Source: Octopus bimaculoides
Taxonomy: Eukaryota
Assembly (NCBI RefSeq): GCF_001194135.2
Contig: NC_069005.1
Span: 8,702,591-8,745,929 of the forward strand
Reading direction: 5' to 3'
Length of the DNA stretch: 43,339 nucleotides
Shown here: positions 4,284 through 12,235 of the stretch, one piece after another
How positions within the stretch are numbered: the stretch's first letter is position 1
Layout of the letters: the number at the start of each line of letters is the position of its first letter
Made by a program: the position numbers and the translations under genes
The notes under the pieces: model-generated
What the model was told of the DNA's origin: nothing
What the model saw: the letters and a program-made list of their open reading frames with translations, nothing else
Database searches by the model: none

Positions 4284-4609
4284 CAGAAGAAAAATTTGAA
4301 AGAGAACTTAGCTTTAATTTTCTCTTATGTATTTAAAACTGATGAGAGATGTTGAAGAGAGTATATTTGACTTATTTTTTTTATTTTATTTCTGTTGATT
4401 TATTCCATTTTTTTTTCTTTTCTTGTTTGGCTTTTTTTTTCTTTGGTTTATTCCTTTATGAATATTCCTTAAAGTAATCCCCCCCCCTACCTTCTCACTG
4501 CACCACCTCTACCACTGTTCCTCCACAAAGGAGACAGTCATACGTTCATTAATGAAACACACACAATGAAATTAGCGCTGCTGTGCTATATTAGTTTACA
4601 TGTGGATGC

Positions 4610-5090
4610 CTCATCACCATCATCATCACCACCGTTCTCTTCATCATGATCATAGTCATCATTAGCATCATTACCATCATGATTATCCTGATCAGCATCA
4701 ATTTTGTGATGTTCATGATGATGATAATGATGATTACCATGTTTGCTATCACCACCACAACAATCATCATCATCTGTAGCAGCATTCCTCTTCTTCTTCT
4801 TCTTCTCATCACCACCACTACCACCACCAGTGCTGCCCTCATTACCACCACAAGCACCACCACCGCAATCATCATCACCATTATAGCAATCATCGGCATT
4901 GTCGGCCTCCTCTCTCATCATCATCAGCAGTAGTAACAACAGCAACACCAGTCCCCATTACTGAAACCACCATCCTACTACTACTACTACTATCACTAAT
5001 TTTATTGTCTTCATCATCATCATCATCATCATCACTATATTTCTTTTTGCCATCATCATCATCATTAACTCCATTTGTCTTTCAGTACAG
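4610..5090. repeat. Degenerate (CAT/CAC/CTT)n trinucleotide tract
   Basis: 3-bp periodicity is largely maintained over about 480 bp. Confidence 0.9.
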
Positions 5091-5159: not shown

Positions 5160-5510
5160 TCATACATATATATTAATACACCGGCTTGTTGTATATAGAC
5201 CTGTCTTCGTCTTTTGTTTTTTTTAAAATTCCAACTATATAGGTCATCAGCTGTCGGACGCCGACGAAGGGAAATAACCCTGAAATCCGGATACGTTCGT
5301 GCTGCAGATCGAGGTGAGAGGGATAACTTCCCTTGGCAAACAGGACACAGTCGTGTGTCGATAAGCCAGCTGGAGGAGATGTCCTCCTGGGGCTAAAAGC
5401 AACAGTAACATCCACCCCTAGGGGTCAGCCACACTTAAGTGGCAATATACTACACTTTATCGTGCAGTTACTGTTAATACTTCATTTAGAGAATTAACAT
5501 TGCTTATATA
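5160..5510 (+). mobile_element. Putative Penelope-like pLTR/retrozyme fragment carrying HHR-1, running into an assembly gap
   Basis: Island clearly richer in GC and CpG than its flanks, containing the hammerhead and several hairpins. No RT or GIY-YIG ORF is visible, so the class is inferred from hammerhead architecture. Confidence 0.5.
5248..5304 (+). ncRNA. Type I minimal hammerhead ribozyme motif (HHR-1), Penelope-like element/retrozyme style
   Basis: Stem I CGGACG 5255-5260 pairs with CGTTCG 5294-5299, extended by CAGC 5248-5251/GCTG 5301-5304. Core CCGACGA 5261-5267; stem II AGGG-aaataa-CCCT 5268-5281; GAAA 5282-5285; palindromic stem III ATCCGGAT 5285-5292; predicted cleavage after A5293 (AUA). 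Confidence 0.85.
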
Positions 5511-6005
5511 NNNNNNNNNNNNNNNNNNNNNNNNNNNNNNNNNNNNNNNNNNNNNNNNNNNNNNNNNNNNNNNNNNNNNNNNNNNNNNNNNNNNNNNNNN
5601 NNNNNNNNNNNNNNNNNNNNNNNNNNNNNNNNNNNNNNNNNNNNNNNNNNNNNNNNNNNNNNNNNNNNNNNNNNNNNNNNNNNNNNNNNNNNNNNNNNNN
5701 NNNNNNNNNNNNNNNNNNNNNNNNNNNNNNNNNNNNNNNNNNNNNNNNNNNNNNNNNNNNNNNNNNNNNNNNNNNNNNNNNNNNNNNNNNNNNNNNNNNN
5801 NNNNNNNNNNNNNNNNNNNNNNNNNNNNNNNNNNNNNNNNNNNNNNNNNNNNNNNNNNNNNNNNNNNNNNNNNNNNNNNNNNNNNNNNNNNNNNNNNNNN
5901 NNNNNNNNNNNNNNNNNNNNNNNNNNNNNNNNNNNNNNNNNNNNNNNNNNNNNNNNNNNNNNNNNNNNNNNNNNNNNNNNNNNNNNNNNNNNNNNNNNNN
6001 NNNNN

Positions 6006-6325
6006 GGTGTCAAAACAGGAAGTGTGTGTAAGGGAAGACAATTCTGTGGGTTTTATACTCTTTAGTTGGAGTTCTGGCCTCTTTGTCAACAGGAAGTTTA
6101 TGTCTGTTCTTAGAGAAACAAGAAGTAAATTTATATGTATTTCAATGGGTAGGCGAGAGAAGGGAATGTGGTCACCAAGGAGTTTGTATGTTAAGAACCA
6201 TTTGAAATTTCTCTATATTTCTCTTTTTGTAGAGAAAGAATATAAAACCCACAGAATTGTCTTTCCTTACACAAATTTCCTGTTTTGACACCACACTTCC
6301 TGTTTAACACATAAACTCTCAGCCT
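6006..6325. mobile_element. Foldback/MITE-like element with 52-bp inverted repeats
   Basis: 6006-6057 is the reverse complement of 6241-6292 at 49/52 positions. Sub-repeat ACAGGAAGT recurs. The left end is hidden in the gap, so no TSD is visible. Confidence 0.7.
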
Positions 6326-11720: not shown

Positions 11721-11989
11721 CCTACATCTGTTGTCCATAGCAGGAGAGCCCTCAACAGTGCCAACCATGTTCAGAGTTGTGTCACCAGTGACATATGGAG
11801 ATTGTCGTGTTAGGTGTGCTGCCACATCTGATGCCACCAAATTTCAAAGAGGTGTATAACAAAAGTTTTCCATTAGGATTTGTCATTAAATTAATGAGTA
11901 AGGTTAATGAATTTATAATGAATTTGCCATTTTCGATGGGTGTGCAGTGCACACCTAGCACACCTGGATTATACACCCTGGGTTGTCAC

Positions 11990-12235
11990 CAAGGTACCAA
12001 TGAGTTCAATGAAGAATTTAATATACAGGTAGATGTCCATCAAGGTTCAATCCTCAGTTCTTACTTGTTTATTATAATTTCTCTAAGGTATAATTGAGGA
12101 GTTAAAGACTGGCTTGTCCAAGGAAACTTTTTTATGCTGACGACCAAGTTCTTACAGCTGAATCTTTTTGAAGAATTAGAGGAGAAATTCCAAATCCAGA
12201 TACAAAATTAGAATCTCAGTGTCTTAATGAAAGCG
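11990..12235 (+). pseudogene. Decayed RTE-clade LINE reverse transcriptase fragment
   Basis: NEEFNIQVDVHQGSILSSYLFIII (HQGS at 12038-12049), then after frameshifts YADD at 12133-12144 and AES..EELEEKFQ. Confidence 0.85.

What the first reader, a model, noticed from the sequence alone, without database searches (positions are those of the whole stretch)
5248..5304. HHR-1: complete hammerhead fold with a perfect 8-nt palindromic stem III
All three helices and the core can be drawn directly: a 6-bp stem I plus a 4-bp extension beyond an internal loop, a 4-bp stem II with an AAATAA loop, and the self-complementary ATCCGGAT. The stem I internal loop and stem II loop sit where tertiary loop-loop contacts occur in extended hammerheads (inference). 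CpGs are retained, suggesting a young or constrained copy.
Basis: partly seen in the sequence, partly recalled or inferred. Interest (0 to 1): 0.88.

Follow-up and report, generated by a model that had tools for sequence, protein, structure and literature searches.

The report
Lone hammerhead-like motif, imperfect core
A 57-base stretch folds like the dimer-forming hammerhead ribozymes of animal retroelements, but one essential core base is changed, no ribozyme model recognises it and no second copy was found, so it is most likely a solitary, weakened relic of a known kind.

Summary
Helix I is 6 bp with two 4-bp extensions. Helix II is 4 bp with an AAAUAA loop. Helix III is the palindrome AUCCGGAU. 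The cleavage-site base is A5293. This is the published layout of animal type I hammerheads.

The core is not complete. Box 1 reads CCGACGA, so position 4 is C where the consensus has U. The 10.1-11.1 pair is A-U where the consensus has G-C.

- **Model tests:** No Rfam hammerhead model reports the site, even at E<=10 on 65 bases. A model I built from four published retrozyme hammerheads ranks it first in the window, but at only 12.1 bits (E about 0.3).
- **Chance:** The layout with at most one box-1 mismatch occurred 4 times in 440 Mb of composition-matched random sequence. That is about 7e-4 per window, or tens per gigabase genome.
- **CpG:** The motif has the highest CpG density in the window (observed/expected 1.56 against 0.30).
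- **Copies and context:** I found no second copy, tandem partner, RT/endonuclease ORF or outside homologue. An assembly gap abuts the element.

Best reading: a solitary, probably young copy of a retrozyme/Penelope-type dimeric hammerhead with a U4C core, weak or inactive. Interest is modest.

The parts
5242..5245 (+). 5' strand of the outermost helix I extension (GGUC), pairs with 5307-5310
   Evidence: pair probabilities 0.97-0.99 in a 151-nt context.
5248..5251 (+). 5' strand of the 4-bp helix I extension (CAGC), pairs with 5301-5304
   Evidence: probability 0.99.
5252..5254 (+). Internal loop of helix I, 5' side (UGU); the opposite side is U5300. This is the position of loop 1 in canonical type I hammerheads.
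   Evidence: for the geometry; PMC4209133 places loop 1 after 6 bp of helix I. The tertiary contacts themselves were not tested.
5255..5260 (+). Helix I, 5' strand (CGGACG), pairs with 5294-5299 (6 bp, one G-U)
   Evidence: probability 0.96-0.97.
5261..5267 (+). Core box 1, CCGACGA: C3, C4 (consensus U4), G5, A6, C7, G8, A9
   Evidence: C5262 is the deviation from CUGANGA.
5268..5281 (+). Helix II (AGGG/CCCU, 4 bp; 10.1-11.1 is A-U rather than G-C) with the 6-nt loop AAAUAA at 5272-5277
   Evidence: probability 0.98-0.99.
5282..5284 (+). Core box 2: G12, A13, A14
5285..5292 (+). Helix III: the 8-nt palindrome AUCCGGAU (A15.1 to U16.1). As a monomer it gives 2 bp plus a CCGG loop; between two copies it gives an 8-bp helix.
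   Evidence: the monomeric helix III has probability 0; the intermolecular helix has probability 0.92-1.0.
5293..5293 (+). A17; the predicted scissile bond lies between A5293 and C5294
   Evidence: Position in the fold. Cleavage was not tested.
5294..5310 (+). 3' strands of helix I (5294-5299), U5300, the extension (5301-5304) and the outer extension (5307-5310)
5180..5510 (.). GC- and CpG-richer structured block that holds the motif. It begins after TA-rich sequence and runs into the assembly gap.
   Evidence: GC 0.48 and CpG observed/expected 0.77 over 5180-5450, against 0.34 and 0.30 for the window; folding z-score -3.0 on both strands; no other copy in the window.
5511..6005 (.). Assembly gap (N run) directly 3' of the block. 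It could hide the rest of the element or a tandem partner.
5250..5411 (-). 54-aa ORF antisense to the motif. It is present in the protein collection (UniRef-type source) as a singleton with no Pfam domain.

Best explanation
Positions 5242-5310 (+) are a genuine descendant of the animal type I hammerhead ribozyme carried by non-LTR retrozymes and Penelope-like elements. It is present here as a solitary copy inside a block of at least 330 bp that is probably a recently inserted or truncated retroelement fragment.

How it would work (inferred, not shown): helices I and II form within one RNA. The palindrome AUCCGGAU cannot make a stable helix III alone, so two copies pair through it in a domain-swapped double hammerhead. 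Each would then cut 3' of A5293.

Because invariant U4 is C and 10.1-11.1 is A-U, and because no partner copy lies nearby, this copy is probably slow or dead rather than a working processing site.
For: 1. **Published layout met on every count.** The published layout is helix I 6 bp, helix II 4 bp, helix III 1-2 bp plus a 2-4 nt palindromic loop, with an internal loop after helix I (PMC4209133). The motif matches each item.
2. **Natural self-cleaving examples look the same.** In the retrozyme hammerheads, helix III with its loop reads as a 6-10 nt palindrome: mussel ACGCGCGU, axolotl ACACGUGU and ACAUGU, coral ACAGUACUGU. One axolotl motif also cleaves after A17.
3. **Core largely intact.** 10 of 11 fixed core positions are present, and GAAAY / RUH are satisfied.
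4. **Rare by chance.** The layout occurred 4 times in 440 Mb of random sequence with one box-1 mismatch allowed, and 0 times with CUGANGA or CCGANGA.
5. **Top model hit.** It is the best hit in the window for model R1, built from four published retrozyme hammerheads. The alignment is full length and in register, with all 12 pairs standard.
6. **Dimer energetically favoured.** -43.1 kcal/mol against 2 x -19.4 kcal/mol for monomers.
7. **CpG retention.** The motif has the highest CpG density in a strongly CpG-depleted window, which fits a young copy.
8. **Solitary copies are a known state.** 'Solo' retrozyme monomers are described in bioRxiv 10.64898/2026.07.22.740005.
9. **U4C has a natural precedent.** A viroid carries it with considerably decreased activity in vitro yet stays infectious (PMC3088659).
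Against: - No Rfam hammerhead model reports the site at gathering score, at E<=10 on 301 nt, or at E<=10 on 65 nt.
- The R1 score is only 12.1 bits, E about 0.3.
- U4 is replaced. In a pairwise mutational scan, mutants of the CUGA turn had low activity apart from the swap of the C-G pair (PMC9901934).
- Hammerhead-like RNAs with core changes outside an expected genetic context were inactive when tested (PMC3088659 Fig. S7).
- There is no second copy in 43 kb and no RT or GIY-YIG ORF within about 4 kb.
- No homologue turned up in any collection I could search.
- In the monomer, CCG 5261-5263 pairs with CGG 5288-5290 (probability 0.84-0.97), which locks up C3, C4 and G5.
- At whole-genome scale, tens of chance look-alikes with one core mismatch are expected.
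Confidence: 0.55

Rival explanations
1. Chance look-alike. The block 5180-5510 is an unrelated structured, GC-richer sequence, for example part of the transcript behind the annotated antisense 54-aa ORF. A long interrupted hairpin with an internal stem-loop happens to carry 10 of 11 hammerhead core bases.
For: - No Rfam hammerhead hit even on 65 nt at E<=10.
- The custom model gives E about 0.3.
- The core is imperfect, and the 10.1-11.1 pair is not G-C.
- The sequence is single copy, with no retroelement protein nearby.
- The block is equally structured on both strands, z = -3.0.
- A gene model exists on the opposite strand.
- Simulation extrapolates to tens of one-mismatch look-alikes per gigabase genome.
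- A review warns that relaxed-core searches gave mostly false positives (PMC6155905).
Against: - The expectation for one window is about 7e-4.
- That figure leaves out the full 8-nt palindrome, the two helix I extensions, the 3/1 internal loop at the canonical distance and the CpG excess.
- The layout matches published natural motifs point by point.
Confidence: 0.27
2. Working ribozyme with a variant core. Either C4 (with A10.1-U11.1 and A17) is the consensus of a lineage-specific hammerhead family, or this single copy has been co-opted by the host like the intronic hammerheads of amniotes. In both cases it cleaves at a useful rate, as a dimer or helped by the helix I extension and loop 2.
For: - The CpG at C4-G5 and six other CpGs are retained in a genome that has lost 70% of its CpGs. 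This could reflect constraint.
- A second, weaker hammerhead-like site in the same window (32917-32880, minus strand) shares C4, A10.1-U11.1 and A17. About 0.065 sites of that quality are expected per window with any one box-1 mismatch.
- A natural U4C hammerhead supports viroid infectivity (PMC3088659).
- Single type I motifs with internally looped helix I extensions can cleave as monomers (PMC6155905).
- A cloned single mussel repeat self-cleaves at about 0.1 per min (PMC7229834).
Against: - The two sites share nothing beyond the core. The second has only a 4-bp helix I with two G-U pairs and sits at a SINE junction.
- Mutational data predict low activity for U4 changes.
- C4 strengthens the competing inactive fold: monomer minimum free energy -19.4 kcal/mol against -17.2 kcal/mol with U4.
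- No conservation data exist.
Confidence: 0.13

Closest known systems
Type I hammerheads of metazoan non-LTR retrozymes (coral, mussel and axolotl; Cervera and de la Pena 2020, PMC7229834)
   Same: - Open helix I of 6 bp, helix II of 4 bp with a 5-6 nt loop, then GAAAY.
- Helix III plus its loop reads as a 6-10 nt palindrome and RUH follows. The mussel motif has ACGCGCGU and one axolotl motif cleaves after A17.
- The motif lies in a highly self-paired segment of a few hundred nt.
   Different: - C instead of U at core position 4.
- A-U instead of G-C at 10.1-11.1.
- U-A instead of C-G at 15.2-16.2.
- No tandem repeat is seen; there is one copy next to a gap.
- No family members are known.
- Rfam does not recognise it.
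Minimal hammerheads in the pseudo-LTRs of Penelope-like elements (Cervera and de la Pena 2014, PMC4209133; Lunse et al. 2017 as cited in PMC6765202)
   Same: - Type I topology with a very short, palindromic helix III, and action expected as a dimer.
- Most copies in a genome are solitary and derive from truncated elements.
- The block begins next to TA-rich sequence, the kind of site some of these elements prefer. This is weak evidence in so TA-rich a window.
   Different: - The minimal motifs usually have a longer helix II (6-8 bp), a shorter helix I, an extra base before 10.1 and a conserved G10.1-C11.1 pair. This motif has the canonical 6/4 layout instead.
- No RT or GIY-YIG ORF and no second pseudo-LTR lie in the neighbourhood.
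Natural U4C hammerhead of a viroid (Ambros and Flores 1998, as cited in PMC3088659)
   Same: The same core substitution. Activity is considerably decreased in vitro, yet the viroid remains infectious.
   Different: The viroid motif sits in a replicating RNA under selection. Here there is one DNA copy in an animal genome with no evidence of selection or activity.

Membership tests
Hammerhead ribozyme (any type) | Three helices around a junction; for type I, helix I is open and helices II and III are closed | tested here: met
   helices I and II have pair probability >=0.96. Helix III exists as a palindrome; it forms only between two copies.
Hammerhead ribozyme (any type) | Core box 1: C3 U4 G5 A6 N7 G8 A9 | tested here: not met
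   Positions 5261-5267 read CCGACGA, so position 4 is C. The other five fixed positions are present.
Hammerhead ribozyme (any type) | Core box 2: G12 A13 A14, the A15.1-U16.1 pair, and H17 (not G) before the cut | tested here: met
   GAA at 5282-5284, A5285 with U5292, and A5293.
Hammerhead ribozyme (any type) | G10.1-C11.1 pair, the most conserved pair after 15.1-16.1 (PMC3088659) | tested here: not met
   The pair is A5268-U5281. It is still a pair. Natural exceptions exist, such as a U-U mismatch.
Hammerhead ribozyme (any type) | Match to the Rfam covariance models of the hammerhead families | tested here: not met
   No hit at gathering score, at E<=10 on 301 nt, or at E<=10 on 65 nt, where matches of 7-14 bits to other families were listed. 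I could not run a positive control for these models.
Hammerhead ribozyme (any type) | Site-specific self-cleavage giving 2',3'-cyclic phosphate and 5'-OH ends | not testable with these tools
   This needs in vitro transcription or RNA-end mapping.
Canonical metazoan type I hammerhead (retrozyme type) | Helix I 6 bp, helix II 4 bp, helix III 1-2 bp capped by a 2-4 nt palindromic loop (PMC4209133) | tested here: met
   Helix I 6 bp, helix II 4 bp, helix III 2 bp plus the CCGG loop, forming an 8-nt palindrome. Natural examples are the same.
Canonical metazoan type I hammerhead (retrozyme type) | Significant score with a covariance model built from experimentally used retrozyme hammerheads (R1: coral, mussel, two axolotl) | tested here: inconclusive
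   Best hit in the window and a full-length alignment with all 12 pairs standard, but only 12.1 bits and E about 0.3. The model rests on 4 sequences and has rough calibration.
Canonical metazoan type I hammerhead (retrozyme type) | Conserved loop 1-loop 2 tertiary contacts | not tested
   Only the geometry (UGU/U internal loop after 6 bp; 6-nt loop 2) was seen. The conserved nucleotides are given in figures I could not read. Mussel motifs lack most of them anyway.
Non-LTR retrozyme | Tandem repeats of about 170-400 bp, each with one hammerhead | tested here: inconclusive
   There is no second copy or self-similarity in the window, but a 495-N gap starts 217 nt after the cut site. Solo monomers are a described state.
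Penelope-like element | Hammerhead lies in a pseudo-LTR flanking an RT plus GIY-YIG ORF | tested here: not met
   The stop-to-stop ORF list shows no such ORF. Ten ORFs within about 4 kb have no Pfam match. A truncated solo pseudo-LTR cannot be excluded.
Any repeat family with hammerheads | Other copies with compensatory changes in the helices | not testable with these tools
   No animal genome collection was available. Pattern and protein-guided scans of metagenome, prokaryote, viral and plasmid collections, and of the protein databases, found nothing.

The most novel reading that the evidence does not exclude
The source animal carries a hammerhead lineage whose consensus core has C at position 4, together with A10.1-U11.1 and cleavage after A17, and which still cleaves as a palindrome-mediated dimer. 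The motif at 5242-5310 would be a young member, and the weak site at 32917-32880 (minus strand) a decayed one. From a repeat I recognise only from memory, the animal may be a cephalopod. This would be the first animal hammerhead family in which the U-turn uridine is naturally replaced.
Probability: 0.1. Interest if true: 0.55.

Novelty: new member of a known kind. Interest (0 to 1): 0.3.

Why it matters
If the motif is real, it adds one more animal genome to the many that carry retroelement hammerheads. It also offers a natural U4C/A10.1-U11.1 core in the canonical animal scaffold, which is easy to test against a C5262U version for how far peripheral helices and dimerisation can rescue a damaged U-turn.

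It is also a caution for motif reading. A fold that 'draws' perfectly can still miss an invariant base and fail every curated model. As a single, probably inactive copy it changes nothing in the field.

Tried and rejected
1. **Other RNA families.** No Rfam family matches the block. I recalled short resemblances of GUUCGUGCUG and CCUAGGGG to RNase MRP RNA, and of GCUGACCCCU to U1 snRNA. I dropped these because the element order is wrong and no model matches.
2. **A minus-strand hammerhead.** A canonical CUGAUGA sits at 5250-5244 (minus strand), but no GAAA partner follows it.
3. **A second copy in the window.** blastn with word size 7 and a 3-mismatch pattern search found none.
4. **Homologues through pseudo-proteins.**
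   - The 80-aa antisense ORF has no candidates.
   - The 54-aa antisense ORF is in the collection but is a singleton with no contig on record.
   - An ORF across the second site has no hits.
5. **Public DNA collections.** A degenerate 33-nt hammerhead pattern gave 0 matches in metagenome and viral contigs. Protein-guided scans of metagenome, prokaryote and viral contigs gave no relatives. Plasmids gave no match, so vector contamination is unlikely.
6. **Literature string searches.** Searches for the motif and for the SINE-like repeat found nothing relevant. The organism is therefore not identified.
7. **SINE or tRNA origin.** ARAGORN finds no tRNA in the window.
8. **LINE RT fragment.** A suspected fragment at 11792-12094 has no Pfam support.

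Full report
**What the window is.** The 43,339-bp window is AT-rich (GC about 0.34) and strongly CpG-depleted (observed/expected 0.30). It is full of TA/TG/CA microsatellites and interrupted by eleven N runs, so it is a draft eukaryotic scaffold. A recurrent SINE-like repeat reminds me of octopus repeats. That is memory only, and neither string searches in papers nor protein searches could confirm it. No tRNA and no Rfam family reaches threshold anywhere in the window.

**Checking the observation.**
- Helix I: 5255-5260 with 5294-5299 (6 bp, one G-U).
- Internal loop: UGU on one side and U on the other.
- Extension: 4 bp, 5248-5251 with 5301-5304.
- Helix II: 5268-5271 with 5278-5281, closed by AAAUAA.
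- GAA at 5282-5284, the perfect palindrome AUCCGGAU at 5285-5292, and A5293 as the base before the predicted cut.

In a 151-nt context, helices I and II have pair probabilities of at least 0.96. The remark on CpGs is also right. The 57 nt hold 7 CpGs (observed/expected 1.56), the densest spot in the window.

The core is not complete. Box 1 (5261-5267) is CCGACGA, while the hammerhead consensus is CUGANGA. Position 7 is free, but position 4 is an invariant U of the uridine turn, and here it is C5262.

The 10.1-11.1 pair is also non-consensus. It is described as the most conserved pair after 15.1-16.1 (PMC3088659), and here it is A-U rather than G-C. The rest of the core is present: C3, G5, A6, G8, A9, G12, A13, A14, A15.1-U16.1 and H17 = A.

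**Is it more than chance?** I wrote a descriptor using the published canonical layout of animal type I hammerheads. That layout is helix I 6 bp, helix II 4 bp, and helix III 1-2 bp with a small palindromic loop (PMC4209133).
- In the real window the descriptor finds only this site. A much looser setting adds one more at 32917-32880, minus strand.
- In 440 Mb of first-order Markov sequence with the window's composition, the strict layout with at most one box-1 mismatch appeared 4 times. It never appeared with CUGANGA or CCGANGA.
- That is about 7e-4 per window. It also implies tens of one-mismatch look-alikes in a gigabase genome.

The estimate ignores the full 8-nt palindrome, the helix I extensions and the CpG excess, all of which make chance less likely. 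For one window the motif is well beyond chance. For a genome-wide trawl it would not be, on the descriptor alone.

**Independent model tests.**
- *Rfam.* No hammerhead family is reported at gathering score or at E<=10 on 301 nt. None is reported at E<=10 on just the 65 nt, where matches of 7-14 bits to unrelated families were listed. I could not run a positive control for the Rfam models.
- *Custom model.* I took four natural retrozyme hammerheads from the constructs in the supplement of PMC7229834 (coral, mussel, two axolotl). I aligned them, built covariance model R1 and searched the whole window with filters off.
- *Result.* The site is the best hit. It aligns end to end in the expected register with all 12 pairs standard. 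The score is only 12.1 bits, E about 0.3. The other hits are alignments with the middle of the model deleted.

The model tests are therefore weak. The site is the most hammerhead-like place in the window, but it is not a statistically secure member.

**Comparison with known motifs.** In each of the four natural motifs, helix III and its loop read as a palindrome: ACAGUACUGU, ACGCGCGU, ACACGUGU and ACAUGU. All have 6-bp helices I and 4-bp helices II with 5-6 nt loops. One axolotl motif has a U-U at 10.1-11.1 and cleaves after A17. AUCCGGAU fits this series exactly. Published criteria for such motifs are CUGANGA / GAAAY / RUH. The site meets the last two and fails the first at one base.

**How it would work.** As a monomer, helix III does not form (probability 0). 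A competing helix, CCG 5261-5263 with CGG 5288-5290, forms instead (probability 0.84-0.97) and buries C3, C4 and G5. A local hairpin, GUCGG-ACG-CCGAC at 5253-5265, is a further competitor.

Two copies can form the domain-swapped double hammerhead. Helix III becomes an 8-bp intermolecular helix and each helix I forms between the two molecules.
- This structure scores -43.1 kcal/mol.
- The unconstrained dimer optimum is -44.5 kcal/mol.
- Two monomers give 2 x -19.4 kcal/mol.
- The intermolecular helix III has probability 0.92-1.0.

This is the classical mechanism of newt, viroid and Penelope-type hammerheads. These steps are inferred from sequence and energy models. Nothing shows cleavage.

**What the core change means.**
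- In a comprehensive pairwise mutational scan, mutants of the CUGA turn had low activity. The only exception was the swap of the C-G pair (PMC9901934).
- Hammerhead-like RNAs with core changes in unexpected contexts were inactive (PMC3088659 Fig. S7).
- On the other side, a natural U4C viroid hammerhead is considerably impaired in vitro yet sufficient in vivo (PMC3088659).
- C4 also stabilises the inactive monomer fold: -19.4 kcal/mol against -17.2 kcal/mol with U.

The copy is therefore probably slow or dead. A lineage-specific tolerated variant cannot be excluded.

**Context.**
- The motif sits in a block of at least 330 bp (5180-5510) that is GC- and CpG-richer than its surroundings. The block folds better than shuffles on both strands, z = -3.0.
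- On the left the block abuts TA-rich sequence and a long (CAT/CAC)n-type microsatellite. On the right it runs into a 495-N gap.
- Beyond the gap lies an unrelated MITE-like element with 58-nt terminal inverted repeats.
- There is no second copy in the window, no tandem arrangement, and no RT or GIY-YIG ORF nearby.
- A 54-aa ORF antisense to the motif is an annotated protein in a UniRef-type source. It is a singleton without domains. This hints that the locus was given a gene model, perhaps from transcript evidence, but that is inference.
- Solitary retrozyme monomers and solitary Penelope-type motifs are common in other animals.

**Search for relatives.** The available DNA collections hold no animal genomes. 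A degenerate 33-nt pattern of the motif, protein-guided scans and BLAST against plasmids all found nothing. Protein searches with ORFs across the locus also found nothing. The decisive test, conservation and covariation in other copies, could not be run.

**The second site.** 32917-32880 (minus strand) reads UUGU CCGAUGA ACG GGAA CGU GAA ACUCAGAGU A ACGG. It shares C4, A10.1-U11.1 and A17 with the first site.
- Its helix I is only 4 bp with two G-U pairs.
- It has no Rfam or R1 hit.
- It lies at the 3' junction of a SINE-like copy.
- Apart from the core it shares nothing with the first site.
- About 0.065 sites of that quality, with any one box-1 mismatch, are expected per window.

It is a curiosity that slightly raises the odds of a C4-type family. 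It is not evidence for one.

**Verdict.** The structural observation is real and unlikely to be chance in this window. The claim of a complete hammerhead is overstated. The best reading (about 0.55) is a solitary, probably young copy of the known retroelement-borne dimeric type I hammerhead with a U4C core, weak or inactive. A chance look-alike gets about 0.27, and a working variant-core or co-opted ribozyme about 0.13. The finding is a new member of a known kind, and interest is about 0.3.

Noticed in passing
window 32880-32917 (minus strand): A second, weak hammerhead-like site: UUGU CCGAUGA ACG-GGAA-CGU GAA ACUCAGAGU A ACGG. It shares C4, A10.1-U11.1 and A17 with the main motif. It lies at the 3' junction of a SINE-like repeat copy. 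It has no Rfam hit and no R1 hit.
   Followed up: partly
window 6006-6292: A MITE-like element with 58-nt terminal inverted repeats that are 93% complementary (6006-6063 and 6235-6292). It starts exactly at the right edge of the assembly gap 5511-6005.
   Followed up: partly
window 5250-5411 (minus strand): A 54-aa ORF antisense to the motif is present in the protein collection (UniRef-type source). It is a singleton with no Pfam domain, and no encoding contig is on record.
   Followed up: yes
window 32334-32474, 33364-33503, 32917-33010, 26938-26976, 19693-19719: Copies of a SINE-like repeat (..GGCACCTTGGGC..CCAAAGC.TTGTGAGTGGATTTG..GAAACTGAAAGAAGCC, followed by a TA/TG microsatellite). It resembles octopus repeats from memory only. 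ARAGORN finds no tRNA.
   Followed up: partly
window 16598-16639: This stretch is 83% identical to the tail that follows the second hammerhead-like site (AAACTC.GAGTAA..GTTTTTTTGT.ATAT). That tail therefore belongs to a repeat of its own.
   Followed up: no
window 27584-27721, 35414-35549, 41456-41591: Segments of about 136 nt related at 80% in inverted orientation. They are another dispersed repeat family.
   Followed up: no
window 4590-5070: A long, coding-looking tract of CAT/CAC/GAT-type trinucleotide microsatellites lies directly upstream of the block. It yields spurious ORFs on both strands.
   Followed up: no
window 5244-5250 (minus strand): A canonical CUGAUGA box on the strand opposite the motif. 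No GAAA partner follows, so it does not form a hammerhead.
   Followed up: yes
window 5253-5265 and 5261-5263 / 5288-5290: Two alternative pairings compete with the active core: the hairpin GUCGG-ACG-CCGAC, and CCG with CGG. Both use C5262, the non-consensus base.
   Followed up: partly
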